A DNA stretch of 64,000 bases from Okamejei kenojei (GCA_035221665.1 CM069142.1:124001-188000); one strand, 5' to 3'. Shown: positions 3,728 to 42,369, numbered from the stretch's first letter. Notes: generated from the letters alone by a model not told the origin. Translations and numbers: made by a program.

Positions 3728-4227
3728 NNNNNNNNNNNNNNNNNNNNNNNNNNNNNNNNNNNNNNNNNNNNNNNNNNNNNNNNNNNNNNNNNNNNNNNNN
3801 NNNNNNNNNNNNNNNNNNNNNNNNNNNNNNNNNNNNNNNNNNNNNNNNNNNNNNNNNNNNNNNNNNNNNNNNNNNNNNNNNNNNNNNNNNNNNNNNNNNN
3901 NNNNNNNNNNNNNNNNNNNNNNNNNNNNNNNNNNNNNNNNNNNNNNNNNNNNNNNNNNNNNNNNNNNNNNNNNNNNNNNNNNNNNNNNNNNNNNNNNNNN
4001 NNNNNNNNNNNNNNNNNNNNNNNNNNNNNNNNNNNNNNNNNNNNNNNNNNNNNNNNNNNNNNNNNNNNNNNNNNNNNNNNNNNNNNNNNNNNNNNNNNNN
4101 NNNNNNNNNNNNNNNNNNNNNNNNNNNNNNNNNNNNNNNNNNNNNNNNNNNNNNNNNNNNNNNNNNNNNNNNNNNNNNNNNNNNNNNNNNNNNNNNNNNN
4201 NNNNNNNNNNNNNNNNNNNNNNNNNNN
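3728..4227. other. Assembly gap (500 N)
   Basis: Run of N. Confidence 1.
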
Positions 4228-21689: not shown

Positions 21690-22349
21690 TATGTATAATA
21701 GTATCTGATTTGATTGGATAACATGCAAAACAAAGCTTTTCACTGTACCTCGCTACACATGACAATAATAAAGCTAAACTTTTGGAACTCTCAGAAGGCG
21801 ATCAATGCCCAGTCACTAAGATAAATTGGGTTTGAGCTCAAGGAAAGTATTTGAATAGAGAAGTAAGTTTTTCAGAAGCCATGCTATGGCCTCTAGTTTC
21901 TGTTTCTTATATCTACGTATATTGTTTGTGAGAAGAGTGGTGTGGTTTTATGATAATTATCAGTTTTGTGGTCTCATTGAAGACGGACAAATTATTACTC
22001 CTGGGTTATGGGTTCTTCATAAATTACTTTTATCTTTGACCTTTAAGATGGCATATTCTGTTTCTTGGGATTGCTCGGTCCATCTCAATTCCTGTCTTTG
22101 CTGTCCCTTGTTGAAATAAACAGGCGCATAATGCAGATTTTCATTGTTTATTGAAACATTATCCTGTAACACAAAAATAATAAGTAACAATAAGACTCAC
22201 TGGTAAATATTAGTGTTATAGAGTTCATATCATAGAATTATACAGTATGGAAACAGACCCATCGGCCCAACTTGTCCACACTGACTAAGATGCCCCATCT
22301 AAGCTTGTCCCATTTGCCCGTGTTTGGCTCTCGTTCCTGCAAACTTTTC

Positions 22350-22558
22350 CTATCCATGCACCTGTCCATGCACTTGTCCATGCACCCATCCATGTACCTG
22401 TCCATGCACCTGTTCATGCAGTTGTCCATGTACCTGTCCATGTACCTGTCCATGTATTGTCCATGTATGTGTCCACGCACTTGTCCATGCACCTGTCCAT
22501 GCAACTGTCCATTCACCTGTCCATGCAACTGTCCATGCACATGTCCATGTACCTGTCC
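22350..22558. repeat. 12-bp minisatellite (CCTGTCCATGCA-like, ~17 copies) expanded within a CR1 3' end
   Basis: Direct tandem repeat; produces the spurious TCPC/MDRY ORFs. Confidence 0.9.
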
Positions 22559-24143
22559 AAATATCTTTAAAATGGTGTTATAGTCCCTGCCTCAACTACC
22601 TCCTCTGGCGGCTCGTTCCATATACCCACCACCCTCTGAGTGATAAAGGTGCCCCTCAGGTTTTTCCCTCTCACATTAAATATATGCCTTCTATTTCCCA
22701 ATTCCCTTTTCTGGGTAAAAGACTCACCTATTCCCATCATGATTTTCTATACATCTATAATATCGCCACTTATGCTCCTGTGCTTCAGGAATAGTGTCTT
22801 AGCCTATCCAACCTCTCCCAACAGCTCAGGCCCTCAGGTCCTGGCAACATAATTGTAAATCTGCTCTGCATACATCCCACCTTATTGTTATAAACATTTT
22901 ATTCTTCATGTTAGAATTGGCAAAGAGGAGAGTTTTAGAACTTTAGAAAATTGAGGAAAACAATAGAATGAAGATGAGAGGATTTATTTTAGCCAGAGGG
23001 TGGTGAATCTGTGGAATTCATTAGCGCAGACAGTGGTAGAGGCCAAGACATTGGATAATTTTAAAGCGGGGAATGATAGATTCTTCATTAGTACGGGTGT
23101 CAAAGATTACGGGGAGAAGGCAGGAGAATTGGTTGAGAGGGAAAATTAGATCAGCCATAAGTGAATGTCGGAGCAGACTCGATGGGCTGAATGACCTAAT
23201 TCTGCTACTATGTCTGATGATCTTATGGTCATTTTATTTTTAGCTGAATCTAATGAGGTATAAATGCTCTGTTCCAGGTTTATGTTGAAAAGTCATGTGA
23301 AAATCAATAAAGAATTTGATTAGTAAACACCAAATGGGCAAAAGCTAAAGTGTGGATGTGTGTGTCCATGGACTAGTTGTGACACTTGTGGGCAATTTCT
23401 GTTTCACTGATATCACTGCCAACATCTGCCAGGAATGAAGCAGGTTACAAAGAAAGGTGGACACTGCCTAGTCCATCACAGGAACAGACCTCCCCAACAT
23501 CGAAGGGATCCGCAGGAGGCACTGCCTCAAAAAGTGAACCAATATCATCAGAGACCCACCCTGGCCACGATTTAATCTCATTGATAGACACGAAGTGCTG
23601 GAGAAAGTCAATGAGTCTCATGTCTGTGTGGTGAATAAGTGACGTTTTGGGATGGGACCCTTCTTCAGACTGAGGAAGGGGGGAGGAGTAGGGATGTGGA
23701 AATGGAAGTAAGAAAAGATCGGGCCAAATCAGGGCCAGCAACAGATGACCTCAGTTAGGGTGGTTCTGATGGGATTGTTGTTGGTAGGGGACAGTGTAAT
23801 ATGACGGTGGAATATTGCTAGAATCAGAAAACTTTACGCTGGCAATTCACATATTACTGAAGTGACATCCAACTGCTAAAACTCATCCGACCACTCACTG
23901 AGCTGTTTAAGGAGAAAACCCATCCCCATCACTTTCAGCTGCTGCACATTCAGTACGAGGAATCCAGAGAAAGATATCGGGCAGAATTAATTCATTCATC
24001 CATGCTCTAATTTCCTCCCATGTCGCAAAGACGTGCGGGTTTGTAGATTAATTGGCCTTCTGTAAATTGCCCCCAGTGTGTAGGGAATATCTGTGCCTGC
24101 TATAATCTGACAATGTGACCTGGTGTCTGACCAACAAAAAAGG

Positions 24144-24630
24144 ACCAGACTGATTCCTGGGATGTCAGGACTGTCTTATGAAGAAAGACTGGATAGACTC
24201 GGTTTATACTCTCTGGAATTTAGGAGATTAAGAGGGGATCTTATAGAAACTTACAAAATTCTTAAGGGGTTGGACAGGCTAGATGCAGGAAGATTGTTCC
24301 CGATGTTGGGGAAGTCCAGGACAAGGGGTCACAGCTTGAGGATAAGGGGGAAATCCTTTAAGACCGAGATGAGAAAGACTTTTTTCACACAGAGAGTGGT
24401 GAGTCTCTGGAACTCTCTGCCACAGAGGGTAGTTGAGGCCAGTTCATTGGCTATATTTAAGAGTGAGTTGGATGTGGCCCTTGTGGCTAAGGGGATCAGA
24501 GGGTATGGAGAGAAGGCAGGTACGGGATACTGAGTTGGATGATCAGCCATGATCATATTGAATGGCGGTGCAGGCTCGAAGGGCTGAATGGCCTACTCCT
24601 GCACCTAATTTCTATGTTTCTATGTTTCTA
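24144..24630 (+). mobile_element. Young 5'-truncated CR1 LINE
   Basis: Open C-terminal ORF2 (..GYGEKAGTGY*) and TTTCTATG tail; near-identical to 55555-56045. Confidence 0.92.
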
Positions 24631-25425
24631 TTAACAGCTATTTTGTTTGTCTCGCGCTATCAGGATTTGTGTGTGTAAAATGATACAGAGGTGAACGTGA
24701 GTCTGCGGAGTGCAACTAATGTCATGTGCAAAAAGGTGCATGATAGGGGGGCACATTGGCGCAGCGGTAGAGTTGCTGCCTCGCAGCGCCAGAGACCCAG
24801 GTTTAATCCCGACTACATGTGCTGTCTGTACAGAGTTTATATGTTCTCTCCTTGATCGCGCGGGATCTCCAGATGCTCCAGTTTCCTCCCACACTCCAAA
24901 GACGTACAGGTTTGTAGGTTAATTGGCTTTGGTAAATTTGTAAAATGTCCCTAGTGTGTAGGTTAGCGCTAGTGTAAGAGGTGATTGCTGGTCGGAGTGG
25001 ACTCGGAGGGCCAAGAGGCCTGTTTCCACGCTGTATCTTTAAAGTCTAACCAGACTTGGTCAAGATATGTCATTTCATCAACGGTAGGATATACACTTGA
25101 AGAAGTGAGAAATAACATTGAGGGCAATGAGACCCTGGATTATACTCCAAGTTCACAGAGTAGAAGAATAAAAAAAGTAACAGAACTGTACTTCTTTAAT
25201 AAATACGCAAGGAACTGCAGATGGTGGCTTGGAAAAAAAGACAAAATGTTTGAATAACACAGCCAGATTTCCCTATCCTGGGTAAATGACCCTGCAGTCA
25301 CTATATTGTGTAAACCAGGCACTTGAGGTCATTTTACGCATAGGAGATTTAGTTGAAAAGAATGAAATCCAATGCAAATTAGTAGCAGCATCACTTCTTC
25401 AACTGGTTATTAACAACGAAACTCA

Positions 25426-25533
25426 TTACACGAGCAATGTCAAATGGCTGGTATGCAGTTGATCACAAGGCTTCCTTGAAGAGGAAGTGTGCTTTGGAAT
25501 ATGGATCTCACTTTGTTGGCAGTTTAATTCCAG
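25426..25533 (-). CDS. IgSF gene A exon 6 (terminal cytoplasmic: LELNCQQSEIHIPKHTSSSRKPCDQLHTSHLTLLV*)
   Basis: Acceptor tttgcttccatcag; phase 0 matches exon 5; open to TAA. Confidence 0.55.
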   Translation of the reverse strand: MELNCQQSEIHIPKHTSSSRKPCDQLHTSHLTLLV

Positions 25534-26041
25534 CTGATGGAAGCAAACAGGGCAAACAAGTTAAATGCATTGAAAAATTCTCTCGATCGGTAAAGTAGAG
25601 TGACCATTTGGGTTTGCTGACACAAGGAACTGCAGATATATTAGAGAAACAGGTCCTTCGGCTCACCGAGTCTGCGCCGACCAGCGATTAACCCCTGCAC
25701 TAGCGCTATCCTGCACACTAGCGATAATTTTTACAGAAGCTAATTAACCTGTACGCCTTTGGAGAATGAGCAGCCAGAACCCGGTGAAAACCGACGAGGT
25801 CACAGGGAAAACCTACAAACTCCGTACAGACAGCACCCGTAGTCAGGATCAAACCCGGGTCTCTGGTGCTGTAAGGCAGCAACTCTACTGCTGCGCCACC
25901 TTGCTGCCGAATGGCTTGTGTTATTAGTCCATTACATCCAATAGTGCTGATGAATCTGTTCATATAAGCTGACAATACCTCAGTGTACATTAGAGTATCG
26001 TGCACGCAACATAAGGGTAAATATCAAACTAAATTACTCAC

Positions 26042-26109
26042 CTCATTTACTAAGTTCTTTCGTTTTCTCATTCTTTGAATATCAACAGTTGTGTCATGGA
26101 CAGATGATT
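26042..26109 (-). CDS. IgSF gene A exon 5 (cytoplasmic: ESSVHDTTVDIQRMRKRKNLVNE)
   Basis: Acceptor tttttatag, donor GAG|GTGAGT, phase 1 to phase 0, open frame. Confidence 0.7.
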
Positions 26110-26636
26110 CTATAAAAATATCATGAATATTTAGTGTACTTTAGATACAGGACAGAAACAGGCCCTTCAGCCCACCGAGTCTATGCTGACCATCGATCAT
26201 ACTAGTTCTATGTTATCCCACTTTCTCGGCCACTCCCTACACACTTAGGGCAATTTACAGAGGGCCAATTAACCTACAAACCCAAACATCTTTGGGATGT
26301 GAGAGGAAACTGGAGCACTCTGAAGAAACCCACGCAGTCACATGGAGAACGTGCAAACTCCACACAGTCAGCACACAGTCAGGATTGAACCCACTGTGAG
26401 GCAGCAGCTCTACAAGCTTCAACACTGTGTTGCCCTAATTGCGTTTAAATTATGTAAATCTCTCTGGGAACTAAAGACATTCCCTTCACCACCTCCAGTT
26501 TAAATTCCAGTTGGAATATTTTGGAGGACCAAGTAACCAAGAACCAAGAACCAGGAACCAAGAAAAGACAATATTCACTTTTATATGCTCAGTTTTTAGT
26601 TAAATTACAAAATAAAATGTACAATGTATACATTAC

Positions 26637-26738
26637 CTTTTTCTTTCTTCAATTTACTGTGATAATTATACACGATCCAGACGCATATTGGTACTATTAG
26701 GATCAGACTCAGTAGGATGAAATAATACTTAAGGAATC
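26637..26738 (-). CDS. IgSF gene A exon 4 (transmembrane: RFLKYYFILLSLILIVPICVWIVYNYHSKLKKEK)
   Basis: Acceptor ttttcaag, donor AAG|GTAATG, phase 1/1, ~20-aa hydrophobic run followed by basic residues. Confidence 0.82.
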
Positions 26739-29019
26739 CTTGAAAATAACAATTGAAATGTGAATCAAAACTATGCTCCAATGAATTACAAATATAATCA
26801 TGACTAATGCATGTTACGTTTATATAATCATCATTTCAGTAAATGCATCATTAAACATGTATTTAGTTTAGTTTCATTCTGTTTAGAGAAACAGAATAGA
26901 ACCTGGTGCATCTGCCCACCGAGTCCATCGCTGACCATCGATCACCCGCTCACATCAATTCTATGTTGTCCCACTTTCACATCCACTCTCTCTACACACT
27001 AGAAGCAACGTGCAGGGATCAATCGAATTACAAACCAGAGCACCCGGAGGAAACCCACGTGGTCACAGCTAAAACAGGCAATCTCCGCACAGACGATTGA
27101 AACAGAAATATATTAAAATCTAATATTTCCGAGATATTTCTCTTGTGAAATATGTCAATAGGATTCTTTCTGCAGGAATTCCATGGTAAATATCACCAAT
27201 ACGTCTGTTAATATAGATACAGCTATGTGTGGGCATCGAAGGACGAGAAGCCAAAGCGAACAAGTGGAAGCCATATAATCAAACGGAAATGACACTGAAA
27301 AGCCAAATAATCCAACAGGCGCAACGCCGAAAAGCCAAATAACCGAAAGGTCGGGGCACCTAAAAGCCAACTAACTGAACGGACGCAACGCGGAAAAGCC
27401 AAATAATGGGCGGCACTTGTCAGCGATTGGTCCAGAACCCCCGCGTCCATCACATCACTGGCTGGGGGAGACAGGAGGGTGGTTGTCATTTTCCTCACAC
27501 AAGACCACCTGAGGTGGATTAGTAAAGAGAGCCCACATGGGTGGATTAGTAGACCTTGAAGAGGCATTGACACTTTTTTTTTATGTAGAGGGGTAATAGA
27601 GGTAAGGTATGTGATTTGAGAGTAATGAATGGTCTGCGGGGGGAAAAAAGTATGATGTACTCGACACCACTGCTAAAATGGCGCTATTAAATGCGCAAAG
27701 TTCAAAAAAACAAATTAACTGCAAATAAACTGAAAAAATACAGATTATCTGGTGTTTCGTGCGTTACGCATGGGGTGGAAGATTGCAACCTTCCGGTGTG
27801 GGAGGAGATAAAATTGTTCGTTGTCATGCACACTTGTCATCAGCCCGCCAGGGAATTTGTGTGTGTCCGCCCCCCCATGTTTTAAAAGCAATTTACTATG
27901 GCTGCCAGCACCCCGGTTGGTCTGCCCCCGTGGCCTGGGGGAGGGGGGTGAGTCGGGGAGGGGGTCGCGGCCCTGTTTCCACCAATCCTTCCACCAGCAC
28001 GCACAACAAGCACAACAAGCACAAGATAGACATCATTGTCTGGCTCTGGCTGAACAACTTCTAATCTTGAGTGTGGACTCGATAAGTGTTGTAAATTACC
28101 GAGCTGTTCATGAGAAGTGAAACATTTCACAAACCGCTTGGGTTTATTGGAAAATCAACTGTATAACTGCTTCCAAAAAGCCTCTTAAACACCACTATCA
28201 TATCTGCCTCCACTACCACCCCTGGCAGCGTGTTCCAGGCACACACCACCCTCTGTGTACAAAAACTCACCCTGCACATCTTTGTTAAACTTTGCCCCTT
28301 ATAAACCAAAGAACAAGGAAAAATCATTATGCAAAATCAACAGTGAATCCTTAATATAATGGTCTGTCTTGGAATGTGTTGTGCACGGAATCTGCCAACC
28401 TCATAAAGCATAGAACATAGTGCAGGCCCTTCAGCCTGTAATGTCTGAGACCAACATGGAGCCAAGTTAAACCAATCTTCTCTGCCTACACGTGAATCGT
28501 ATCCCTCCATTCCCTGCACATCCATATGCCTATCTGAACACCTCTTAAATGCCACTATCATATCAGCCTGCACCGCCACTACTAGCAGCATGATCCATGC
28601 ACTCCCACCCTCTGTTTAAAACAACTTGTCCCGTACATCTCCTTTAAACTTTGCCTCTCTCACCTTGAAGTTATGCCCTCTAGTCCGTGACATTTCCACT
28701 ATCTACCTTTCACATTGATTTGCTATATCTGCTTACTGTCTTCAGTAAATCATTTACTATGAAACCACAATCTCCCAAGTCACAGAGGATAAACGCTGCC
28801 TCCTGTCATATAATAATAAAGCACTACATTGGTTAGTAAGTAAAGGAACCAATCTACAATAAGAAGCTTTAAAAAAAAATAAAGAAAAGAAAGAAAATGC
28901 TGGAAATATGCAGCAGGTCAGGCAGCAAATGTGGAAAGAGAAAGTTAAAGAAACAGGTCAAGGACCGATCGTGAGAACAGGGAGCAAATTAGACGATAGA
29001 GAGATGAGCAGAATTTCAT

Positions 29020-29750
29020 AGGAAGGAACTGCGGATGCTGGTTTAAACCGAAGATAGTCACAAAATGCTGAAGTAACTCAGCGGGACAGAAGCATCTCTG
29101 GAGAGAAGGAAATGGTGATGTTTTGAGTCAAGACCTCTTCAGACTGAAAGTCAAGGGAAAGGGAAACAAGAGATATCGACACTGATGTAGAGAGATATAG
29201 ATATGCAAAAAAGTATTGATGATAAAGGAAACAGGTAATTGTTAGCTGTAGCTACGTGAGAACAAAAAGCTGTTGTGACTTGGATGGGGAGGGGTGGAGA
29301 GAGAGAGGGAATGCAAGGGTTACTTGAAGTTAGAGAAATCAATATACATGCCACTGGGCTGTAAGCTGCCCAAGCGAAATATGTGATGTTGTTCCTCCAA
29401 TTTCCATTTAACCTCACTTTGACAATGGAGGAGGTAGGACAGAAAGGTCAGTGTGGGAATGGGAAGGAGAATTAAAGTGTTTAGCAACCGGGAGATCAGG
29501 TAGGTCCAGGCGGACTAAGCGAAGGTGTTCAGCGAAACAATCGCCCAGTCTACATTTGGTCTCGCCGATGTATAAGAGTCCATACCTCGAACAACGGATA
29601 CAGTAGGTGAGGTTGGAGGAGATGCAAGTGAACCTCTGCCTAACCTGAAAGGATGACCGGGATCCCGGGATGGAATCGAGGGAGGAGGTATAGGGACAGG
29701 TGTTGCATTCCTTGCGGTTGCAGGGGAATTTTTACCTGGGGGAAAAGTGG
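29020..29750 (-). mobile_element. Penelope-like element 3' portion (GIY-YIG endonuclease remnant + terminal repeat)
   Basis: Minus strand reads CIRCSRYGLLYIGETKCRLGDCFAEHLR at ~29520-29600; followed by the CTGAAGA..AAA-bearing terminal repeat. Confidence 0.8.
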
Positions 29751-31232
29751 CAATAATTTCAAAAGTAAGTAAAAAGTAAATAAAAATCAGAAGGTAGACA
29801 CAAATGGCTGTAGTAACTCAGCGGTTCAGTCAGCTTGTCTAAAGAAATGAAATACTGTAGGTGACGTTTTGGGTCGCAACCCTTTTTCAGACAGATAGAT
29901 AGAGAATGTAGGAAAGAAATGCAGATGCTGGTTTATACCGAAGATAGACCAATGAAAACAAGAAAACTACTGTAAAGTAGAACATATAACAGGAACAGGT
30001 CCTTCAGCCCACTATGGCCATGAAGAACATGATGCCAAGTTAAACTAATCTCTGTTTGCATATAATCCATATCCCTCCATTCCCTGCAATTCCATGTGCC
30101 TATCAAAACCTGTAACGTCTAACACCACAAATGGCATCTACCTCCCCGACCACTCCTGGCAGCACGCCCCAGCTCACACCACCCTCAATAAAAACTTAAA
30201 TGCTCATAAGATCAGGCAGCATTTGTGAAGAGAAAATCAGAATAAATTTTTCAGGTCGCAACCTGTGTCAGAACTTTTTTTAACTATTTTGTTTTAGTTT
30301 AGGTTAGTTTATGGTCACGTGGACTGAGATACAGCAAAAAGCTTTTGTTTTCTCATCAAAATATACAATTTTGATTTTTTTCCCCACATTATGCTATACT
30401 TCACATCTATTTTCTTGTTCATATATTCTATCCACAGTCAACTTTCCTATCTGTCTTTGTATCATTCGAAAATTTAGCAACATCACAAAGCTGCCTTCAT
30501 AGGAGTCGTATACATTACAATATTTCATAATACAATATTCAGTCTGAAGAAGGGTCCTGACCCGAAACATCACCTATCCATGTTCTCCACAGATGCTGCC
30601 TGACCCGTTGAGTTCCTCCAGCACTTTGTGTTTATGCAGGATTCCAGCATCTGAGATTCCTGTGTCTCCACATTACTTTCCAACTGTCTGTGTCATCACC
30701 AAATTTAGCAACATCCCATCTCATGTGAGTCATAAAAAGTCATTGATCGTACAGTGTGGAAACAGGCCCTTTGCGTACAGTGACCAAGATACCCCTATCC
30801 TATCCATGTACCTGTCCAAATGTTTTTTAATCATTGTGATAGTACCTGCCTCAACTACCTCCTCTGGCAGCCTGAATTCAGAAAACTGTTGCATCTCAGG
30901 TTCCTATTGAATCTTTCCCCCTCACTTTAATCCCATTCTTCATACTCCTGAGCAGCAGCACTATAACCAGTGGGGCTCCGTGAGCGATATTGAAATGGTA
31001 ATAATTAAGTACAGTGTATAGTTTATGGAGAGACAAGGAACTGCAGATGCTGGAATCTTGAGCAAAACACAAAGTGCTGGGGGAACTCAGTGGGTCAGGG
31101 AGCATCTGTGGGCTGAAGAAGGGTCCCGACCCGAAACGACGCATGTCCATTCCCTCCACAGATGCTGAGTTCCTCCAGCACTTTGTGTGTTGCTCAAGAT
31201 TCCAGCATCTGCAGTTTCTCGAGTATCAATTT

Positions 31233-31397
31233 TATACATCTTTCTTCAACTTTCATTATTATTTGAAAACATTTACCGTCAAAACACGGCGTAAGTGCTT
31301 TATTAGACCAAGATATATATAATATATATATGATAAAGCATTTACGCCGTATTTTAACGGTAAATGTTTCAAATAATAATGAAGAAAGATGTGTATA
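31233..31397. repeat. Palindromic MITE-like element in intron 3 of gene A
   Basis: ~65-70-bp imperfect inverted arms around a ~30-bp AT-rich spacer. Confidence 0.8.
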
Positions 31398-32212
31398 TAT
31401 GAGCTGATATCATCGATGTATACATACACACATACATATATATAATATATAAGGCAGCAACTCAAATATATATATATATATATATCGATGCACAGATGAA
31501 CTGTACTTGAGTAGCTGCCTCACAGCGCCGTAGACGCGGGTTCAATCCTGACTACGGGAGTTGGATGTGTGGAGTTTGTACGTTCTCCCCGTGACCTGCG
31601 TGGGTTTTTTACGGATGCTCCGGTTTCCTCCCACAGTCCAAAGACGGACAGGTTTGTAGGTTTGTAGGTTAATTGGCTTCGGTAAAATTGTAAATTGTCC
31701 CTAATGGGCAGGGTAGTGTTAATGTATGATGTGTTTAAGAAGAAGGGTCTCGACCCGAAACGTCGCATATCCTTCTCTACATAGAAGCTGCCTCACCCGC
31801 TGAGATCCTCCAGCATTTTGTTCTCTACCCAGTGTATGAGGTGATCGCTGAGTGGCCGAAATGCCCTTTTTTTCCGCGTATCTTTAAAGTCTAAAAGTCT
31901 AAATGCATATTTGCAGTAGACATTGTACACTTTTGATCAGGTCAATGAATTGCGTTCAACGTTCTCCAGAGATGCTACTTGACCCGCTGAGTTACTCCGC
32001 TGGCTACGTTGAACAAATTTGTACAAATGTACTATTAAACCTTGCAATCTTGGACATGTGTAGGACGGAACTGCAGATACTAGTTTACACCGCAGATCGA
32101 CACAAAATGTTGGAGTAACTCGGCAGTAACTGAGCCGCTGAGTTCCTCCAGCACTCTGTGTATCTTCAGTAATTGGAGGACGCTGGCTGCCACGTTCATT
32201 CAAGCCACTTAC

Positions 32213-32512
32213 TTGGGGTGGGAGAGAAGCGTTCGCTCACCGAGCCCGTCCCCGTGAGGTGCTGAACCAGGCAGGTGGCGACCGTGCCCGCCTCTAGCCG
32301 AGGGTCGGTGAGCCGCAACCGGGAGCTCACGTTGAAGCTTCCATCCCCGTTCTCCCTCAGCGGCCCCGCTTCTGTTTCATAGGACAACTGCCCCACGACA
32401 GCCCAGGACATGTTCAGCTCCCTCGGGAAGAATCCGGCGGCCACACAAGTCAGGCTCCGCGTCTCTGCGCCTTCTACCCCGGGATCCAGGGTCAGGGAGA
32501 TGTCAGGCTTCG
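32213..32512 (-). CDS. IgSF gene A exon 3 (C1-set Ig domain)
   Basis: AKPDISL..LTCVAAGFFPRELNMSW..NGDGSFNVSSRL..ATCLVQH; acceptor ttttcctactttacgcag, donor GTAAGT; 300 nt, phase 1/1. Confidence 0.92.
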
Positions 32513-34930
32513 CTGCGTAAAGTAGGAAAATAGCACGCTGTGAATCTTCCAGTCGCTCTCAGTCATGCCTGGAGCAACTGTGATAACACGGCACGCCGTG
32601 CACCGTGCAGGAGGTGCAACCACGTAATTCAATGGATTAGTAGCGGAATAAAGAGGAGCTGCAAATGCTGGTTTATATCAAAGAAAGGCACAAGTACTGG
32701 AGTAACTCAGAGGGTCAGGCGGCATCTCCGGAGAACATGGGTAGGTAACGAGACACAAAGTGCTGGAGTAACGCTTCATGGATGATATGTGATGTTTCGG
32801 GTCGGGTTACTTCTACAGACTACATCTCTTCAGTCTGTGTCTCAAAATACACAATAAGAGAGAAAAATACAGGAAGCGAATGAAATGGAATTGGAGATTG
32901 GAGATGCTGGATTTTTTAAGAATAAGGGGTAGGCCATTTAGAATGGGGATGAGGAAAAACATTTCACCCAGAGAGTTGTGAATCTGTGGAGTTCGCTGCC
33001 TCAGAAGGCAGTGGAGGCCAATTCTCTCGATGCTTTCAAGAGCGAGTTATAGAACTCTTAAAGATAGTGGAGTCCAGGGATATGGGGAGAAGGCAGGAAC
33101 GGGATACTGGTTGTGGATGATCAGCCATGATCACAGTGAATCTGCGGGGGCGATGGACAGGCGGCGTTTCGGGTCGGGACCCTTCCTCGGTCTGAATCGC
33201 CACGTGTCCATTCCCTCCACAGATGCTGCCGGACCCGCCGACTTCCTCCAGCACTTTGTGTATTTTAATGCATTAAATAGACGTGAATATCTTGTAGACG
33301 GTAAACTAAATCAAAGCAGATGATGGACATTAAAACAGAACATATAAATATTCAGCCGGACAGGCCTGATTCGCGGGAAGAGGCTGACGGTCCATGTTCT
33401 CCAGAGATGCTGCCTGACCCGATGAGTTACTCCAGCACTTTGCGTCTTTTTTTTAACCAGCACCTCCGGTTCCTTGTGTCTCAGGGTCAGGGTTTCGGCT
33501 GGAAGCCTTCAATGTGAATCGGTAAATCCCCCCCCCCCCCCCCCCCCCACCTTCAATGAAGCGTGAGGAATGTGTGCGACCATCCCCACTGTCCGCTGAT
33601 GCGGTGGGGTGGGGACCTCACACGCGTCCCAAGTTCCCCAACCCGAATGCTGCCTTAACCGCCGACTTCCCCAGTGCTTTGTGTTTTGCTTAAAGAAGAC
33701 TTCAGCGCCTGCAGTTCCCCGTCTCCACTTCTATTTCTTTCCCTTCCTGCATTTTATCTCTTTCTATTAATGTGTATGTTGCGGCACAAACCAATCCAGC
33801 CCTGACCCTAAACGTCACCTATCCATGATCTCCACAGGTGCTGCCTGACCCGCTATAAACCAGTGTCTACATGTGCCTGCTCCACTGTGAAATCCATCAA
33901 GGTATGCCTTCTTTGAAGAAGTTATCCTCCTCTCTCCGACGCAGTTCTGTAATAACCTCTCTCGCAGTCTGTAGTCGGGCCCCGTACCGAGACGTCGCCG
34001 ATCCATGATCTCCAGAGGTGCTGCCTGACCCGATGAGTTACTCCAGCACTTTGAGTCTGCCCTCTCTCACTGCTGCCCTCATTGATTCTGTCGCTTATAT
34101 TTAGTTGTGTTCATTTTCACACATAAACATGATACATCTGCCGCACATTTGGTTATCGCAGCCGGGAATTGTTTTCAGGGCCAGTTACTCTACTTCCCTG
34201 GAGCCCGGAAGCAAATGTTAAACCGAACTTGACAAAGACGGTCAGGTCTAGAGGGAATCTAGAGAAAACTGGGAGAAACAAAGAGGCTTTTGTTTCCACA
34301 CTCCCTCCGTGTAAGGAAACCAAGGTAATTAAATGGCAGCACTAGACCTGTTGGGGATGTAAACACTGCGACCGAGGTTGAGGTTGTTTTCATTATCTAT
34401 TTTGTATCATTAGGGAGACGGGAGGAACTCCAGATGCGAGTTTTTTTTTAAACCAAAGATAGACTCAAAGCGCTGGATTAACGCAGCGGGTCAGGCAGCG
34501 TCTCTGGAAATCAGGGATAGATGGCGTTTGGGTTCGGGACCTTTTGTCAGACTGGGTTGGTTTGTGCCGGAAAATGAGCATTAATAGAGAGAGATGAAAT
34601 GCAGGAATGAAATGGAAGTAGAGACAGGGAACTGCAGGGGATGCAGTCTTAAGCAAAACACAAAATGCTGGAGGAACTCAGCGGTTAAGGCCGCATCTGT
34701 GGAGGGAATGGACAGGCGGCGTTTCGGGTTGGAGAACTCGGGATTCGTGTGATTCACCAATCCCACCGCATCAGATCTCGGGGTGGCTGTGGAGGCAGAT
34801 ACGATCGCAGAGTTTAAGAGACTTTTGGATAGACACATGAATATACAAGTTAGTTTAACCTGGCCTCATGGTCCGCACGAACATTGTGGGCTGAAGGCCT
34901 TGTTCCTGTTGTATGTTCTATATTAATTAC

Positions 34931-35263
34931 CTCGGATGTGTAATGTTGATCCGTTTCCTATAAACGTTTTCCAGATATCATCATGTATCAGTGCCACACA
35001 ATGGTAAGTGTCTGCATCGTGCACAGTCACCTCCCGAATGACCAGCGAGCCCATAGATACGGACAGTCGGTCGCCTGTCTTCAGAAAACTCTCGGTCTTG
35101 TTGTCCCAGAGCTCCGGGTTGTCTTTCGTCCGAAACCAGTATTGCCTCATTGAAACTTCCTCCCCCTCTCTGGGTAGCAGGGAGCAAGTGAACGTAGCTG
35201 TCTGCCCTCGGAGAAGCGTCAGAGCAGCAGGAGACTGGGTCACCCTCACACCGACAGCGGGCC
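34931..35263 (-). CDS. IgSF gene A exon 2 (V-set domain with germline J-like GNGS motif)
   Basis: VTQSP..ATFTC..YWFR..DADTYHC..FIGNGSTLHIR; AG/GT boundaries; 333 nt, phase 1/1. Confidence 0.93.
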
Positions 35264-35501
35264 CTGGCACGGAAAGTGAACATAGTTAACGACGTCTTCC
35301 GAGTAACTCGAGTTTACTATCATGGGCACAAGGACAGTGAGGTCCAGGCGCAATTAAACCACCCCTCTCTCACCTGTAACTACTTGTGTAGGAAGGAACT
35401 GCAGATGCTGATCTGTATCGAAGACAGACACAAAGTGCTGGAGAAACTCAGCGGCGCTGGCAGAATCTCTGGAGAACATATCTGAAGAAAGGTCGCGACG
35501 C

Positions 35502-35757
35502 GAAACGTCACCTATCCATGTTCTCCACAGATGCTCTGACCCGCTGAGTTACTCCAGCACTGTGTGAAATGTCACCTATCCATGTTCTCCACAGATGCTG
35601 CCTGACCCGCTGAGTTACTCCAGCACTCTGTGAAACGTCACCTATCCATGTTCTCCACAGATGCTCTGACCCGCTGAGTTACTCCAGCACTCTGTGAAAC
35701 GTCACCTATCCATGTTCTCCACAGATGCTGCCTGACCCGCTGAGTTACTCCAACACC
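35502..35757 (+). repeat. Four tandem 64-66-bp copies of part of the Penelope-associated short repeat
   Basis: Units starting GAAA(C/T)GTCACCTATCC at 35502, 35566, 35632, 35696. Confidence 0.9.
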
Positions 35758-36507
35758 GTGTTTTGTTCAAGATTCCAGCATCTGCACTTCATTGTGTCTC
35801 TTACGTTTAGTTGCGTTAACGTCCTCAAGTAAACTAACTGCATTTCCAGCACCTACAGTTCCTTGTGTCGCTTATATTTAAGATAGACACAAGGATTTAA
35901 GATAGTCACATCTCTGGAGAAAAATGACCGGTGACGTTTCGGGTCGGAACCTTTCCCTTAAATTGATTCGTGTTAACTTTCTGACATAGAAACATAGAAA
36001 ATAGGTGCAGGAGGAGGCCATTCGGCCCTTCGAGCCAGCACCGCCATTCATTGTGATCATGGCTGATCGTCCCCAATCAATAACCTTTGCCTGCCTTCTA
36101 CCCTTATCCCTTGACTCCACTAGCCCCTAGAGCTCTATCTCACTCTTAAATCCATCCAGTGATTTGGCCTCCACTGCCCTCTGTGGCAGGGAATTCCACA
36201 AATTCACAACTCTCCGGGTGAAAACGTTTTTTCTGCCTCAGTCTTAAATGGCCTCCCCTTTATTCTTATTTTAACTACATTTTCAATTTCTGCTTTTGTG
36301 TCTAAATTAAAAACTTGCTTGCAACAGCTTCAAATGCACCTACACTGAAACAAACACATATTCAAAAACAAATTGAGCATAAATTACACATGACATTTCT
36401 AAAAGACGGCAAAAAAGCAACAAACATTAGTGCAAAAGGGATAGAAAGAAACATTATCGGAAGACAACGTGAACAGAGGTTGGCAAGGGTGAACATGAAT
36501 GCCTTAC

Positions 36508-36556
36508 CTGGGAGAAGGAGGCAGAGTGTGTAGATGAATGTTGCAAACGATGACAT
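36508..36556 (-). CDS. IgSF gene A exon 1 (signal peptide MSSFATFIYTLCLLLPG)
   Basis: ATG at 36556, hydrophobic leader, donor CAG|GTAAGG, phase 1 compatible with the V exon. Confidence 0.85.
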
Positions 36557-39500
36557 CTTGTGAGGGAAGTGCCGAGACACGGATCACACGGAGCCGCTGG
36601 TCATTCTGCAGAATTCACAACCGCTGCGAGTTTTTCTGCGCTGCTGTGCGTCAGATCGACCGCAGATTGGACGGTCGTTCAGTGGAACAACTCTTCGTAC
36701 ATTTGTGGAAAGAGGAACTGAAGATGCTGATATACAAGAAAAGGGGCAGAAAGTGCTGAAGTAACTCAGCGGATCAGGCAGCATCTCTAGAGAACATGAA
36801 TAGGAACCAACCCGAAACATCACCTCTCCACGTTCTCCAGCCAAGCTGCCTGGGCCGCTGAGTTACTCCAGCACTTTGTGTCTTCATTCATGCGGCCCGA
36901 CACGTATCTCTCCTGCGGCACTTACACGGCAGTCTTGTTTCTTTACGCTGCGACCGCGACCTGCACCCCGTGGAATTCACTTAGAACATAAACACAGCAT
37001 GCAAACAGGCCATTCGGCCCATCGAGGACGGCACAATGGCTCATCTGGTATAGCTGCTGCCTCACAGCGCCAGAGACCCGAGTTCGATCCTGACCTCGGG
37101 TGCTGTTTGTGTGTGGAGTTTAAACGTTCTCCTTGTGACCACGTGGGTTTCTTCCCACATCCCAAAGACGTGCGGGTTTGTAGGTTATTTGGCCTTTGTA
37201 AATGTCCTCTCGTGTAGAGGAGTGGATGAGAAAGTGGGACAGCATGGAACTAGTGTAAACGGGTTATGGATGGTCTGCGTGGACTCGATGGGACAGCAGT
37301 TCCCCCTCGCCAGGTCCCCCATTGTTCTCTGGGTCCCCCCATTGCTGTCGGCGGTGCGGTTCCCGTTGACGCCAGCGGCTTGGCGCTGAGTTGGAATCTG
37401 CGATGGGTTGTTACCGGTGGATCTGCGCCATCGGTCCACACGGGCGGCTGCTCCGTCACGCATGCAGTGAGTGATGACAGAGGGGGCAGCTTCTGGAACC
37501 GGGGACATCTCAGGAACCGCCTGTGAGATTGCTCCACTCCAATGGATCACGTTTAGGGGCGGCACAGTGGGTGGAGTTGCTGCTTCACAGCGCCAGTGAC
37601 CCGGGTTCGATCCTGACCTCGGGGGCTGACTGTGGAGTTGGTAAGTTCTACGTGTTTTACTCACGGGCGCTCCTGTTTCCTTCCACATCCCAATGACATG
37701 TGGATTTGATTGGACTTTACCGGCCCTCAGACTATCTTTGATCGGACTTTATCTTGTACTAAACGTTATCCCCTTCATCATGTAACTATACATTGTGAAT
37801 GGCTCGATTGTAATCATGTGTCGTCTTTCCGCTGACTGGTTAGCACACAACAAAAGCTTTTCACTATAACTCGGGACACGTGGCAATAAACTAAACTCTG
37901 TAAATTATCCGTAGTGTGTAGCGAGTTGATGAGGCAGAAGCGTTAGTTTCCACGCTGTATCTCAAAACTCCACTACTATGGATCTACTCTATGGATCTAT
38001 GGATCAAAACTATGGATCTACTCAAAGAAGTTGGCTCAGTTTTGATCACCTTGCAGAAGGAAGGGATGCCATTAAGCTGGAATTTAAAGTCAAATCGGGC
38101 GCATGCAAATATATTGCCAAACTTCTCGCCTGAACTGCTGGAGATAACCGAGTGCTTTAAATGCGACTCCTGGACTGCGGCAACATCACACGCCCTGAGC
38201 GGGAGAGGAACTTGGTAACTCAAGAGTAAGCGGGAGAGGAGCTTGGTAACTCTGGAGACGAACTTGGAACATCGCAGAAATGACAAGCAAACAGCAAACT
38301 TACCATACCCGTGGGAACTCGGTTCAAACACTTGAACATCAACTTGGAATCTCGTACACAACCACGAGTCTGTCACTCGGGGTCAACTCGCACCGTGAAA
38401 CAGGGCCTTGGAGGATATTGCCAGGACTCGTGGGCCTTAGGGAGACACTAGACTAAGTGGAACCCGTTGGGTCCCTGTCACACGGGTGGCCTGATCCACC
38501 AACGCAACCTGTTCGCCAACGCAATATTCCATCACTCACCCATAGCCCCCAACTGCGCAGGCGCGGCACATTTCCCCTCAGAAATTGTGTTCCTACGGTT
38601 GGGAGCTTTTGCATTTTTCAGCTTGAAATTGTGCAATCTGGTACATACTGTAGTGAGTCTTTTAACTTACACTTGAATGCAACATTTATGCTTTAAATTG
38701 GATTAGGTATGAATAAGGTTAGGCTAAATTACATTCCTAACTACATTCCACAATAGAGCCAGGCTCTGATCAACAGGTGCAGCACATGAATTACTATATT
38801 CATGTATGGAAATCAGATTATATTCATGCTGTCATGCATATATATAGAGAAAAACTCAGAGAAACAAAGCAAAAGTCGGACTTCCATCACTGTTCTGCAC
38901 AAAAAAATCAATCAACATTGTTCAAGAAGGAACTGCAGATGTTGGAGAATCGAAGATAGACAAAATTGCTGGAGAAACTCAGTGGGTGTGGCAGCATCTA
39001 TGGAGCGAAGGAAATGGGCAACGTTTCGGGCTGAAACCCATCTTCAGAAGGTTTCAACCTTACCCTTTGAATATTGAAACAAGACAAAAATAATGCCCCA
39101 TATTCAATCATATATGGTTCAATGAAATTAAGATATATATGTAAAAATATATATGGAAACAGGCCCTTCCGCCCACCAGGTCCACACCGACCAGCAATCT
39201 ATCATACCCCAATTCCATCCATCACGCCAGGGACAATTTACAGAAGCCAATTAACCTACAAACCTGCACTTCTTTCGGATATGGGAGAAACCGGAATATC
39301 CAGAGAAAACCCACGTGGTAGTGAGGCAGCACCTCTACCGCTGCACCACCGTGCCACCACATTACATTATTTTTTTTGTAATATATTTATTATGGTGTCA
39401 TGTGAATAAAGATGAACACATGATTCTGATTTCTGCCCTTAGTTGGATAACACACATGTCCAGTCATTGTGTTTTACGGCTGGTTTTCAACCTCTTCAGG

Positions 39501-39814: not shown

Positions 39815-41650
39815 GACATGTGAGATATGTGAAGAGAAAAAGGTTAGTTAAAACAAATGTAGGTCCCTTGCAGTCAGAAACTGGTGAATTGATCATGGGG
39901 AACAAGGACATGGCAGACCAATTGAATAACTACTTTGGTTCTGTCTTCACTAAGGAAGACATAAATAATCTGCCGGAAATAGCAGGGGACCGGGGGTCAA
40001 ATGAGATGGAGAAACTGAGTGAAATCCATGTTAGCCGGGAAGTGGTGTTAGGTAAATTGAATGGATTAAAGGCCGATAAATCCCCAGGGCCAGATAGGCA
40101 GCATCCCAGAGTACTTAGGGAAGTAGTCCCAGAAATAGTGGATGCATTGGTGATAGTTGTTCAAAACTCTTTAGATTCTGGAGTAGTTCCTGAGGATTGG
40201 AGTGTAGCTAACCCCACTTTTTAAAAAGGGAGGGAGGGAGAAAACGGGGAATTACAGACCAGTTAGTCTAACATCGGGGAATGTAGTGGGGAAAATGCTC
40301 GAGTCAGTTATGAAAGATGGGATAGCAGCACATTTGGAAAGTGGTGAAATCATTGGACAAAGTCAGCATGGATTTATGAAAGGTAAATCATGTCTGACGA
40401 ATCTTATAGAATTTTTCGAGGATCTAACTAGTAGAGTGGATAAGGGAGAACCTGTGGATGTGTTATATCTGGACTTTCAGAAGGCTTTCGACAAGGTCCC
40501 ACATAAGAGATTAGCATTCAAACTTAAAGCACACGGTATTGGGGGTTCAGTGTTGATGTGGATAGAGAACTGGCTGGCAGACAGGAAGCAAAGAGTAGGA
40601 GTAAACAGGTCATTTTCAGAATGGCAGACAGTGACTAGTGGTGTACCGCAAGGCTCAGTGCTGGGACCCCAGCTATTTACAATATATATAAATGATGTGG
40701 ATGAAGGAATTGAATGCAACATCTCCATGTTTGCGGATGACACGAAGCTGGAGGGCAGTGTTAGCTGTGAGGAGGATGCTAGGAGGCTGCAAGGTGACTT
40801 GGATAGGTTGGGTGAGTGGGCAAATGGATGGCAGATGCAGTATAATGTGGATAAATGTGAGGTTATCCACTTTGGCAGCAAAAACAGGAGGGTAGACTAT
40901 TATCTGAACGGTGACCGATTAGGAAAAGGGGAGATGCAACGAGACCTGAGTATCATGGTACACCAGTCATTGAAAGTAGGCATGCAGGTGCAGCGGGCTG
41001 TGAAGAAAGCAAATGCTATGTTGGCATTCATAGCAAAAGGATTTGAGTACAAGAGCAGGGAGGTTCTACTGCAGTTGTACAGGGTCTTGGTGAGGCCACA
41101 CCTGGAGTATTGCGTACAGTTTTGGTCTCCTAATCTGAGGAAAGACACTCTTGCCATAGAGGGAGTACAGAGAAGGTTCACCAAACTGATTCCTGGGATG
41201 TCAGGACTTCCATATGAAGAAAGACAGGATAGACTCGGCTTGTACTCGCTGGAATTTAGGAGATTGAGGGGGAATCTTATAGAGACTTACAAAATTCTTA
41301 AGGGGTTGGACAGGCTAGATGCAGGAAGATTGTTCCCGATGTTGGGGAATTCCAGAACAAGGGGTCACAGTTTAAGGATAAGGGGGAAGTCTTTTAGGAC
41401 CAAGATGAGAAGATCATTTTTCACACAGAGAGTGGTGAGTCTGTGGAATTCTCTGCCACAGAAGGTAGTTGAGGCCAGTTCATTGGCTATATTGAAGTGG
41501 GAGTTAGATGTGGCCCTTGTGGCTAAAGGGATCAGAGGGTATGGAGAGAAGGCAGGTACAGGATACTGAGTTGGATGATCAGCCATGATCATATTGAATG
41601 GCGGTGCAGGCTCGAAGGGCCGAATGGCCTACTCCTGCCCCTATTTTATA
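39815..41650 (+). mobile_element. 5'-truncated CR1 LINE with a 427-aa open RT segment (40286-41569)
   Basis: QHGF..KSCLTNL, YLDFQKAFDKVPH, GVPQGSVLGP, FADDTKL; frameshifts near 40200-40280. Confidence 0.95.
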
Positions 41651-42180: not shown

Positions 42181-42353
42181 CACTCACAGCCGCCAACTGA
42201 TGCGCTTCCCCAGATTGCACAGATCACTGTGATGTGGCGCAAAAGAGACAAACTGTGCAGGGACTGAAGACAGCGTGAGAATTCTGTCATCAGCGTGAGA
42301 ATTGGCTGAAATGTGTGACTCTCACGCTCAAAGTATGAGAGTTGGCAGCCCTG
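42181..42353. repeat. End of a non-autonomous DNA-transposon-like repeat; related copies at 43405-43621 and 39675-39744
   Basis: Shared ..gcgtgaga..gagttggcagccctg terminus (reverse complement CAGGGCTGCCAAC, hAT-like). Confidence 0.55.
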
Positions 42354-42369
42354 TCTAAGGCCGGGGTGT

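What the first reader, a model, noticed from the sequence alone, without database searches (positions are those of the whole stretch)
25426..36556. Complete non-rearranging VJ-C1 transmembrane receptor resembling an antigen-receptor precursor
Seen: six exons with canonical splice sites and compatible phases (49+333+300+102+68+108 nt = 319 aa + stop). The V exon already encodes a CDR3-like loop and a J-like G strand (C-VALIHDDIWKTF-IGNGSTLHIR), I saw no RSS around it, and a true C1 domain follows. Known: C1 domains are largely confined to Ig, TCR, MHC, tapasin, SIRP and B7-H6, and single-exon VJ domains with GxG occur in NKp30, SIRP and PRARP/VJ-C1-type genes proposed as relics of the pre-RAG receptor. 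Inference: this is a chondrichthyan VJ-C1 immune receptor, possibly uncharacterised, rather than a germline-joined IgL (no FGxG, has a TM and a long tail).
Basis: partly seen in the sequence, partly recalled or inferred. Interest (0 to 1): 0.82.

Follow-up and report, generated by a model that had tools for sequence, protein, structure and literature searches.

The report
SIRP-like VJ-C1 inhibitory receptor gene
This is a real, intact gene of a ray or skate for a cell-surface immune receptor with an antibody-like tip fixed in the germline, one constant domain and an inhibitory tail; the family is widespread in sharks and rays under inconsistent automatic names, so it is interesting but not new.

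Summary
The gene is real and lies on the minus strand. They have canonical splice sites and match predicted proteins of at least 11 shark and ray species, collinearly.

The conserved last exon lies 3.3 kb further on (22163-22017). It encodes an ITIM (LHYAPV) and an ITSM-like motif (TEYAIL), giving 332 aa.

But it is not an orphan. Its relatives are annotated as SIRP-beta-1-like, SIRP-alpha-like, Ig kappa-like, TCR-beta-like or uncharacterised.

In other species the family includes partners with the same ectodomain, an arginine in the membrane span and no tyrosine motifs. That is a paired inhibitory/activating system like SIRP-alpha/beta. Frogs have collinear homologues with the same tail motifs.

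By profile score the nearest characterised family is SIRP, about level with Ig light chains and UrIg2; orthology is unresolved.

RNA evidence was inconclusive. This scan has already met the family many times on other DNA of this genome. I class it as a new member of a known kind, of moderate interest.

The parts
36508..36556 (-). Exon 1: start codon and most of the signal peptide (MSSFATFIYTLCLLLP + 1 nt), a split leader in phase 1
   Evidence: ATG at 36556 and donor CCAG|GTAAGG. The leader resembles those of the orthologues: I-Y-x-L-x-L-L-L-x-G, as in the Pristis leader.
34931..35263 (-). Exon 2: end of the leader plus a complete V domain with a built-in J-like G strand (…DTYHCVALIHDDIWKTFIGNGSTLHIR)
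   Evidence: Pfam V-set 1.1e-9. 64% identity to Pristis pectinata XP_051870357, E 6.4e-32. tblastn E 1e-37. AF2 model pLDDT 87.7, with VNAR, NKp30, IgL, TCR and SIRP V domains as neighbours. No RSS.
32213..32512 (-). Exon 3: one C1-set constant domain (AKPDISL…LTCVAAGFFPRELNMSW…ATCLVQH…)
   Evidence: Pfam C1-set 6e-13. Sequence search of PDB chains finds IgG CH3, UrIg2 and IgA constant domains. tblastn E 1e-38 to the Pristis orthologue. AF2 pLDDT 82.4 and C1-set neighbours only. Both C1 copies of the Hypanus protein map to this one exon, so this gene has a single C1.
26637..26738 (-). Exon 4: stalk end, transmembrane helix and stop-transfer (FLKYYFILLSLILIVPICVWIVYNYHSKLKKEK)
   Evidence: AG/GT borders. 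Aligns with the GF.KYYF.LLSLI.IVP.C.WII segment of the inhibitory orthologues.
26042..26109 (-). Exon 5: membrane-proximal cytoplasmic segment (SSVHDTTVDIQRMRKRKNLVNE)
   Evidence: AG/GT borders. Aligns with PSVHDKNVDNQITRKRIKDSVNK of Pristis.
22017..22163 (-). Exon 6 as supported by homology: cytoplasmic tail with an ITIM (LHYAPV) and an ITSM-like motif (TEYAIL); stop TGA at 22019-22017
   Evidence: Acceptor ttgtgttacag|GAT, in phase 0 after exon 5. tblastn E 1.8e-13 (Pristis X1), 1.2e-11 (Hypanus) and 8.8e-11 (Scyliorhinus). Motif scan.
21966..22016 (-). Remnant of the ancestral distal tail behind the stop: IYEEPI readable in a shifted frame and …ICPSS in the original frame. The third tyrosine motif of the orthologues is lost here.
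   Evidence: Three-frame translation, compared with the orthologue tails …KDKNNLFYEEPVHNFTVSICPT. That small indels caused the loss is inference.
25426..25533 (-). At best an alternative 3' exon.
   Evidence: It keeps the frame, but no orthologue aligns to it. It is single-copy in the window.

Best explanation
The locus is an intact six-exon gene on the minus strand, 36556-22017, about 14.5 kb with introns full of transposon debris. It encodes the inhibitory type of a non-rearranging VJ-C1 immunoreceptor of a ray or skate.

Shown:
- The product has a split leader, one V domain whose G strand is a germline J-like GxG(S/T)xLx(I/V) motif, one C1-set domain, a transmembrane helix, and a tail with an ITIM and an ITSM-like motif.
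- It is a member of a multigene family present across sharks and rays, with collinear homologues in frogs.
- In other species the family includes partners with a near-identical ectodomain, an arginine in the membrane span and no tyrosine motifs.

Inferred:
- The V domain binds a germline-fixed ligand, still unknown.
- On engagement the tail tyrosines are phosphorylated and recruit SH2 phosphatases (SHP-1/SHP-2) that damp activation, as in SIRP-alpha.
- The Arg-bearing partners signal through an ITAM adaptor, as SIRP-beta does through DAP12.

The family is SIRP-like in design and about equally similar in sequence to SIRP, Ig light chains and UrIg2. Its exact orthology is open.
For: Gene model:
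- Canonical splice sites and phases for all six exons, and an uninterrupted 999-nt reading frame.
- Domains: V-set 1.1e-9 and C1-set 6e-13. AF2 models with pLDDT 87.7 and 82.4 have V-type and C1-type neighbours respectively.
- No RSS.

Relatives:
- Orthologues were found with the V exon alone among 1.84 billion representatives: Pristis 6.4e-32, Hypanus 3.7e-21, Scyliorhinus 1.2e-19, Narcine 9.7e-17.
- A word search with the Pristis long isoform finds 16 elasmobranch proteins.
- Every window exon aligns collinearly to them.

Signalling:
- Tail motifs LHYAPV and TEYAIL are conserved as L(H/Q)YA.V and (T/S)EYA.L in sharks and rays, and as LHYATI and TEYAAV in frogs.
- Pristis P0087 (tyrosine motifs) and P0088 (transmembrane IPVIVRHFIIVV, short tail) have ectodomains identical at 208 of 209 residues.
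- Mobula and Hemitrygon have the same Arg-bearing short forms.

SIRP likeness:
- The family profile gives SIRP-alpha (2wng) a 70.6-bit V-C1 stretch, against 59.1 for UrIg2 and 46.3 for a lambda chain.
- The junction motif GxGTEL.(V/I)(R/Q)AKP is shared.
- ESM Atlas features put SIRP-alpha clusters first, at 0.97 and 0.96.
- SIRP signalling logic is taken from PMC12975943.

Phylogeny: the window V sits inside the elasmobranch clade with 97/98 support.
Against: - No transcript evidence for this copy. The runs found are not certainly RNA. None covers the V or leader exon. One contig ends exactly at the exon 3 donor (32213), but another runs 40 nt into the intron.
- The V exon has a long terminal branch, 0.57 against a median of 0.099, and the distal tail motifs of the shark orthologues are lost. 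This copy could therefore be drifting.
- Phosphatase recruitment, the ligand and the adaptor pairing are inferred from motifs only.
- No activating-type transmembrane exon is in this window.
- SIRP is not clearly closer than Ig light chains. Tandem-V light-chain constructs total 90-104 bits. With the single V exon, no SIRP appears among the best 60 PDB sequence hits.
Confidence: 0.8

Rival explanations
1. It is a direct relic of the pre-RAG antigen-receptor chain. On this reading it is closer to Ig/TCR than to any innate receptor family, and so is a candidate for the kind of gene the RAG transposon invaded.
For: - A single-exon VJ with a split leader, followed by a C1 domain: the anatomy stressed for UrIg/UrIg2.
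- The best PDB sequence hits of the V exon are IgL, VNAR and TCR V-alpha, not SIRP.
- In the V tree the family falls, weakly (80/66), on the side of the TCR-beta V segments and away from the SIRP-type and NKp30-like V domains.
Against: - The support is weak and the sampling poor: there are no UrIg, few Ig and no PRARP sequences in the tree.
- SIRP-alpha gives the best contiguous V-C1 stretch among the three alignments printed.
- The same claim has already been made for SIRP, NITR, PRARP, NKp30 and UrIg, so anatomy alone does not single this gene out.
Confidence: 0.12
2. It is a germline-joined immunoglobulin light chain or TCR chain gene, as some automatic names of its relatives suggest (Ig kappa-like, TCR beta-like).
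For: Cartilaginous fish do have germline-joined Ig genes (established knowledge). NCBI names some orthologues Ig kappa light chain-like, TCR beta chain-like or Ig heavy chain Mem5-like.
Against: - It has a transmembrane exon and a tail with tyrosine motifs.
- V identity to Ig or TCR is only in the twenties of percent, with E about 1e-7.
- There is no canonical FGxG in this gene.
- The same proteins get SIRP names in other species, so the names are artefacts of weak best hits.
Confidence: 0.02
3. This copy is a silent or decaying paralogue of the family: intact by chance, not expressed.
For: - Long terminal branch of the V exon.
- The third tyrosine motif is lost to small indels and an early stop.
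- No contig of the possible RNA runs covers the V or leader exon.
- Many paralogues exist in this genome (AI notes, not tested here).
Against: - All six exons are open, with good splice sites.
- The window sequence keeps every residue that is invariant in the family alignments: 14 V and 14 C1 columns, including both cysteine pairs and the tryptophans.
- The two proximal tail motifs are intact.
- Batoid orthologues also have shortened tails.
Confidence: 0.15
4. The reader's 319-aa product, ending in exon 25533-25426 without tyrosine motifs, is the main isoform; the ITIM exon is used rarely or not at all.
For: The frame and acceptor are good. NCBI predicts short isoforms without tyrosine motifs beside the long ones in Pristis and Hypanus.
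Against: No sequence similarity of this exon to any isoform of any relative. The ITIM exon is conserved from frogs to rays.
Confidence: 0.08

Closest known systems
SIRP family (SIRP-alpha / SIRP-beta; PTPNS1, CD172)
   Same: - A non-rearranging V domain with a J-like G strand, followed by C1-set domains.
- The V-C1 junction motif GxGTEL.(V/I)(R/Q)AKP.
- An inhibitory form with cytoplasmic tyrosine motifs, paired with a form carrying a basic transmembrane residue and a near-identical ectodomain.
- The best contiguous V-C1 profile stretch among the three alignments printed, 70.6 bits.
- The nearest clusters by ESM Atlas features.
- NCBI's most frequent name for the relatives.
   Different: - One C1 domain instead of two. 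Some rays have two, but by duplication of the same exon.
- The basic transmembrane residue is Arg. The SIRP review says only 'positively charged'; from memory it is Lys in SIRP-beta.
- The V domain lacks the SIRP-type framework seen in a lungfish SIRP-like protein and does not group with it.
- No SIRP appears among the 60 best PDB hits of the V or the C1 exon alone.
- CD47 binding and synteny were not tested.
[quoted passage not shown]
   Same: As I recall the abstract (the paper is not held): non-rearranging VJ-joined IgSF genes with a cytoplasmic ITIM, and a V-C1 ectodomain in fish, amphibian and reptile orthologues. That is exactly the architecture found here and in the frog homologues.
   Different: No PRARP sequence or text was available, so identity with this family is untested. 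As I recall, cartilaginous fish were not among the reported orthologues.
UrIg / UrIg2 (elasmobranch non-rearranging antibody-like genes)
   Same: Single-exon VJ with a split leader, followed by C1-set domains, in elasmobranchs. UrIg2 is among the top PDB hits: 59.1 bits for the V-C1 stretch and 1.8e-6 for C3.
   Different: UrIg2 has 9-11 C domains and forms disulfide-linked dimers. The text read mentions no tyrosine motifs and no paired Arg-bearing form. The gene here has one C1, an ITIM tail and no membrane-proximal cysteine.
NITR (teleost novel immune-type receptors) and NKp30/NCR3
   Same: Germline VJ-type V domains on activating or inhibitory innate receptors. NKp30 is among the closest structural neighbours of the V model.
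   Different: NKp30 has no C domain at all. As far as I know, neither does NITR have a C1-set domain. A shark NKp30-like V groups elsewhere in the tree.

Membership tests
SIRP family | Ectodomain of one V-set and two C1-set domains (PMC12975943) | tested here: not met
   There is only one C1 exon between the V and transmembrane exons. Both C1 copies of the Hypanus protein map to 32513-32223. No other Ig-like frame exists in 22000-36600.
SIRP family | Inhibitory member with cytoplasmic ITIMs that recruit SHP-1/SHP-2 | tested here: inconclusive
   The motifs LHYAPV and TEYAIL are present and conserved. Phosphatase binding cannot be tested with these tools.
SIRP family | Paired activating member with a positively charged transmembrane residue and a homologous ectodomain | tested here: met
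   Met for the family, not for this window. Pristis P0088, Mobula P0098 and Hemitrygon P0099 have Arg in the membrane span and short tails. P0087 and P0088 ectodomains are 208/209 identical.
SIRP family | Sequence affiliation of V and C1 with SIRP rather than with other V-C1 proteins | tested here: inconclusive
   SIRP-alpha gives the best contiguous V-C1 stretch among the three alignments printed, 70.6 bits, and the best ESM Atlas clusters. But Ig light-chain constructs and UrIg2 score close to it. The V exon alone prefers IgL, VNAR and TCR. The V tree does not join it to a lungfish SIRP-type V.
SIRP family | Conserved synteny with the tetrapod SIRP cluster; CD47 as ligand | not testable with these tools
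The window's only other gene is butyrophilin/B7-like.
PRARP | Non-rearranging single-exon VJ, C1 domain in non-avian orthologues, cytoplasmic ITIM (recalled from the abstract of Fu et al. 2019) | tested here: met
   The architecture is met. The definition itself is from memory, because the paper is not held.
PRARP | Sequence orthology to chicken PRARP and its fish, amphibian and reptile orthologues | not testable with these tools
   No PRARP sequence could be obtained. The frog V-C1-ITIM homologues P0046, P0104 and P0105 may or may not be the published amphibian PRARPs.
UrIg/UrIg2 | VJ exon followed by several (3 to 11) C1 domains | tested here: not met
   A single C1 exon. The UrIg2 architecture is taken from PMC12227049.
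Germline-joined IgL / TCR chain | Clear V and C similarity to an Ig or TCR isotype, a canonical FGxG J motif, no own signalling tail | tested here: not met
   The V exon's best Ig hit is E 1.2e-7 in a sequence search of PDB chains. The J motif is F-I-GNG. A transmembrane exon and a tyrosine-motif tail are present.
Rearranging antigen receptor gene segment | RSS (heptamer, 12/23 spacer, nonamer) flanking the V coding end | tested here: not met
   No RSS-like site near the V exon, and no exact heptamer within 300 nt or so of it. There are 30 relaxed matches in the whole window on both strands, none of them near V.

The most novel reading that the evidence does not exclude
The elasmobranch and frog V-C1-ITIM genes may form an old lineage of their own, neither SIRP nor Ig/TCR, that descends from the non-rearranging V-C1 chain of the proto-MHC. 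On this reading the lineage has survived as a diversifying paired-receptor multigene family next to B7/butyrophilin-like genes. That would make it a living model of how an antigen-receptor-like chain signalled before RAG, possibly with linked B7-like ligands as in NKp30-B7H6.
Probability: 0.15. Interest if true: 0.75.

Novelty: new member of a known kind. Interest (0 to 1): 0.4.

Why it matters
Non-rearranging VJ-C1 genes are the material from which models of antigen-receptor origin are built; SIRP, PRARP, NKp30 and UrIg/UrIg2 are the cases discussed so far.

This gene shows that rays and sharks carry a further, numerous family. It has the antigen-receptor ectodomain plan joined to classical inhibitory/activating paired signalling, and its tail motifs are conserved out to frogs.

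The family sits in databases under at least five contradictory names, and I found no paper on it in the held library. A proper description would therefore tidy the annotation. It would also add a data point on whether V-C1 chains first served innate paired receptors.

For this window alone the gain is modest: a corrected gene model with an ITIM/ITSM exon, and a member with a shortened tail.

Tried and rejected
- Word search with the V exon alone found nothing. This is because only proteins of 60-192 aa were candidates, not because relatives are absent.
- RNA evidence: the run search listed no certain RNA run. Laying four runs gave almost only repeat-derived contigs. There were no joints at the exon borders and no coverage of the V or leader exon in the three possible RNA runs. 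One 163-nt contig ends exactly at 32213, and one 161-nt contig runs 40 nt into the intron. I treat this as inconclusive.
- The PRARP paper and the first UrIg paper are not held. Paper searches for SIRP-like or paired V-C1 receptors in cartilaginous fish found no description of this family.
- Fold searches do not discriminate. VNAR, NKp30, IgL, TCR and SIRP V domains all score about 1e-8 to 1e-7. All C1-set proteins score about 1e-6 to 1e-5.
- I expected a chance heptamer at the Y-H-C-V codons; there is none.
- Germline-joined IgL, NKp30, B7-H6 and UrIg membership were considered and rejected on architecture.
- The joined six-exon model was translated only inside local scripts, to check frame and phase. 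It was sent to no search, fold or alignment tool. All searches used single exons by reference or database proteins.

Full report
**What is there.** The finding lies on the minus strand.
- 36556-36508: ATG, 16 codons of signal peptide plus one base, donor GTAAGG.
- 35263-34931: 333 nt.
- 32512-32213: 300 nt.
- 26738-26637: 102 nt.
- 26109-26042: 68 nt.

All have AG/GT borders, and the Ig exons are in phase 1.

**Domains.** Pfam assigns exon 2 to V-set (1.1e-9) and exon 3 to C1-set (6e-13, 49 bits against a 21-bit cut-off). AlphaFold models built on family alignments are confident, at pLDDT 87.7 and 82.4.

The V model's PDB neighbours are the VJ-type V domains: shark VNAR, NKp30, Ig light chain, TCR and SIRP-alpha d1. 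They all score about 1e-8 to 1e-7. The C model's top 50 neighbours are all C1-set proteins: B7-H6, IgG CH3, IgNAR C3, MHC class II, TCR C and MHC class I alpha-3. So the 'true C1 domain' is confirmed.

The G strand reads KTF-I-GNGSTLHI-R. HMMER aligns it with the FGGGTKLEI of light chains, with one extra residue after the Phe. It also matches the family motif GxG(T/S)xLx(I/V).

A relaxed RSS scan required CAC plus at least 6/7 of the heptamer, at least 6/9 of the nonamer, and spacers of 11-13 or 22-24. It finds nothing within a few hundred bases of the V exon, and no exact heptamer there. The gene does not rearrange.

**The last exon is elsewhere.** tblastn of the orthologous proteins against the window instead hits 22166-22020, with E from 1.8e-13 to 2.2e-6.

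This exon starts behind ttgtgttacag at 22163, in phase 0 as exon 5 requires. It reads DNVSINNENLHYAPVYFNKGQQRQELRWTEQSQETEYAILKVKDKSNL-stop. It carries an ITIM (LHYAPV) and an ITSM-like motif (TEYAIL).

The homology-supported model is therefore 999 nt and 332 aa, spanning 36556-22017.

Behind the stop, remnants of the longer ancestral tail are still legible. IYEEPI reads in a shifted frame and …ICPSS in the original frame, against …NLFYEEPVHNFTVSICPT in Pristis and a still longer tail with two more tyrosine motifs in sharks. Small indels have evidently cut off the distal motifs in this copy. That indels were the cause is an inference.

**Relatives.** A word search with the V exon alone was blank because of its length filter. 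The exhaustive HMMER search of 1.84 billion representatives with the V exon found only 86 hits. Four stand out:
- Pristis pectinata: 64% identity, 6.4e-32.
- Hypanus sabinus: 3.7e-21.
- Scyliorhinus canicula: 1.2e-19.
- Narcine bancroftii: 9.7e-17.

A second search with the Pristis long isoform added Mobula (two species), Hemitrygon, Heptranchias, Stegostoma, Hemiscyllium and Heterodontus.

Their NCBI names are a muddle: SIRP-beta-1-like, tyrosine-protein phosphatase non-receptor type substrate 1-like (SIRP-alpha), Ig kappa light chain-like, TCR beta chain-like, Ig heavy chain Mem5-like and uncharacterised. This shows that no named family is a clear best hit.

Every window exon, the leader included, aligns collinearly with these proteins. 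In a V-domain tree the window sequence lies inside the elasmobranch clade (97/98 support), though on a long branch of 0.57.

**A paired-receptor family.** The long forms share the membrane span GF.KYYF.LLSLI.IVP.C.WII and tails with two to four tyrosine motifs.

Pristis, Mobula and Hemitrygon also have short forms. In these the same ectodomain is followed by …LIP(V/F)I.R..II.VG.SLLLL…, with an arginine in the membrane span and no tyrosine motif. The Pristis pair is identical at 208 of 209 ectodomain residues.

This is the signature of paired inhibitory/activating receptors. SIRP-alpha signals through ITIMs and SHP-1/2, and SIRP-beta through a charged transmembrane residue and DAP12 (PMC12975943). 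The window gene is of the inhibitory type. No activating-type exon is in the window.

Myliobatiform rays have a second C1 domain by duplication of the same exon.

**Beyond elasmobranchs.** A frog protein (Leptobrachium, P0046) aligns over V, J motif, C1, membrane span and tail. The match includes LHYATI and TEYAAV at the same spacing (E 8e-16, 27% identity). Spea and Pelobates have relatives, one of them named SIRP-gamma-like. The whole architecture is thus older than the split between cartilaginous and bony vertebrates, or at least shared across it.

**Which known family?** A profile of the family searched against PDB sequences gives, per contiguous stretch:
- SIRP-alpha (2wng) V-C1: 70.6 bits, plus 45.7 bits for its third domain.
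- UrIg2 V-C1: 59.1 bits.
- A lambda chain: 46.3 bits.

The J/hinge junction lGnGTELniQAKP matches SIRP-alpha's sGAGTELSVRAKP. ESM Atlas features also put SIRP-alpha clusters first.

Against a simple SIRP assignment:
- There is one C1 instead of two.
- Tandem-V light-chain constructs total 90-104 bits, so light chains are about as close.
- The V exon alone finds IgL, VNAR and TCR V-alpha but no SIRP among its best 60 PDB sequence hits.
- A lungfish protein with the typical SIRP V framework groups elsewhere.

I therefore call it SIRP-like in design and leave orthology open.

From memory, the PRARP genes of Fu et al. 2019 have the same plan: VJ, C1 in non-avian species, and an ITIM. PRARP is cited in PMC10751288.

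UrIg/UrIg2 share the VJ exon and split leader but have many C domains. NKp30 lacks a C1 domain, and as far as I know NITRs do too.

**Expression.** No listed run is certainly RNA. Laid contigs are nearly all repeats.
- In two runs of one sample, low-depth contigs 99-100% identical to the window cover parts of the C1 exon. One ends exactly at the donor (32213). The other extends 40 nt into the upstream intron.
- Nothing from these runs covers the V or leader exons.
- A fourth run (X13), from organism D and about 93-97% identical to the window, probably DNA of a close relative, carries the orthologous exons. It has a 12-nt in-frame insertion in the C1 exon.

Transcription of this copy is therefore unproven.

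**Context and earlier notes.** The only other gene in the window is a butyrophilin/B7-like gene on the same strand. Its V exon lies at 61235-61678 and its BTN3A2-type Ig-C exon at 59888-60280. The rest is transposon debris, including a LINE reverse transcriptase frame.

The scan's earlier notes say that another VJ-C1 gene lies 1.7 kb before the window and another 558 kb beyond it. They also say that follow-up agents have already described the same family on other pieces of this genome, as SIRP-like, paired, and under inconsistent names. Those notes agree with what I found independently; I did not test their wider taxon lists.

**Limits.**
- The joined spliced model was used only in local scripts for frame checks and was not sent to any search tool. 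Searches were exon by exon, by reference.

**Verdict.** I class it as a new member of a known kind, with interest 0.4.

Noticed in passing
window 59888-61678 (-): A butyrophilin/B7-like gene on the same strand, 23 kb upstream of the receptor gene. It has a V-set exon (61235-61678, 1.1e-7) in which the F-strand Cys is replaced (…DEGKYIVSI…), and a BTN3A2-type Ig-C exon (59888-60280, C2-set_3 6.6e-14). Linkage of a VJ receptor to a B7-like gene recalls NKp30-B7H6, but nothing was tested.
   Followed up: partly
window 21966-22016 (-): Behind the stop codon, the ancestral distal tail is still recognisable in two frames (IYEEPI; ICPSS). This copy has lost the third and later tyrosine motifs that shark orthologues keep.
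   Followed up: partly
P0087 / P0088 (Pristis pectinata), P0098, P0099: An inhibitory and an Arg-transmembrane form with ectodomains identical at 208 of 209 residues. This suggests homogenisation by gene conversion, as in other paired receptors.
   Followed up: partly
P0089, P0090 (Hypanus sabinus, Mobula birostris): Myliobatiform rays carry two near-identical C1 domains, a lineage-specific duplication of the C1 exon. Hypanus also repeats the NVDNQ.KRKWKKD cytoplasmic segment.
   Followed up: no
window 32453-32458 (C1 exon), run X13: Contigs of another organism (organism D, about 93-97% identical to the window) show a 12-nt in-frame insertion in the C1 exon, in the stretch encoding the region after the first cysteine.
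   Followed up: no
window 40208-41566 (+): A 453-codon open frame with a reverse transcriptase domain (RVT_1, 1e-30): a LINE between the two Ig-family genes. SINE-like fragments encoding …AAVELLP.S.RDPG.I.TTGAVC.EF… recur throughout the introns.
   Followed up: no
window 42183-43450, with N run 42391-42532; also N run 3728-4227: A long GT/CA-rich simple repeat (translating as HTHTQGDT… or CVCVSPCV…) around an assembly gap.
   Followed up: no
P0032, P0049 (Heterodontus, Hypanus): A second elasmobranch family turned up: two or three tandem VJ-type V domains (…HGNGSV.LV…), then a transmembrane span and tyrosine motifs. It is named 'prostaglandin F2 receptor negative regulator-like' or uncharacterised, and is distinct from the V-C1 family in the V tree.
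   Followed up: no
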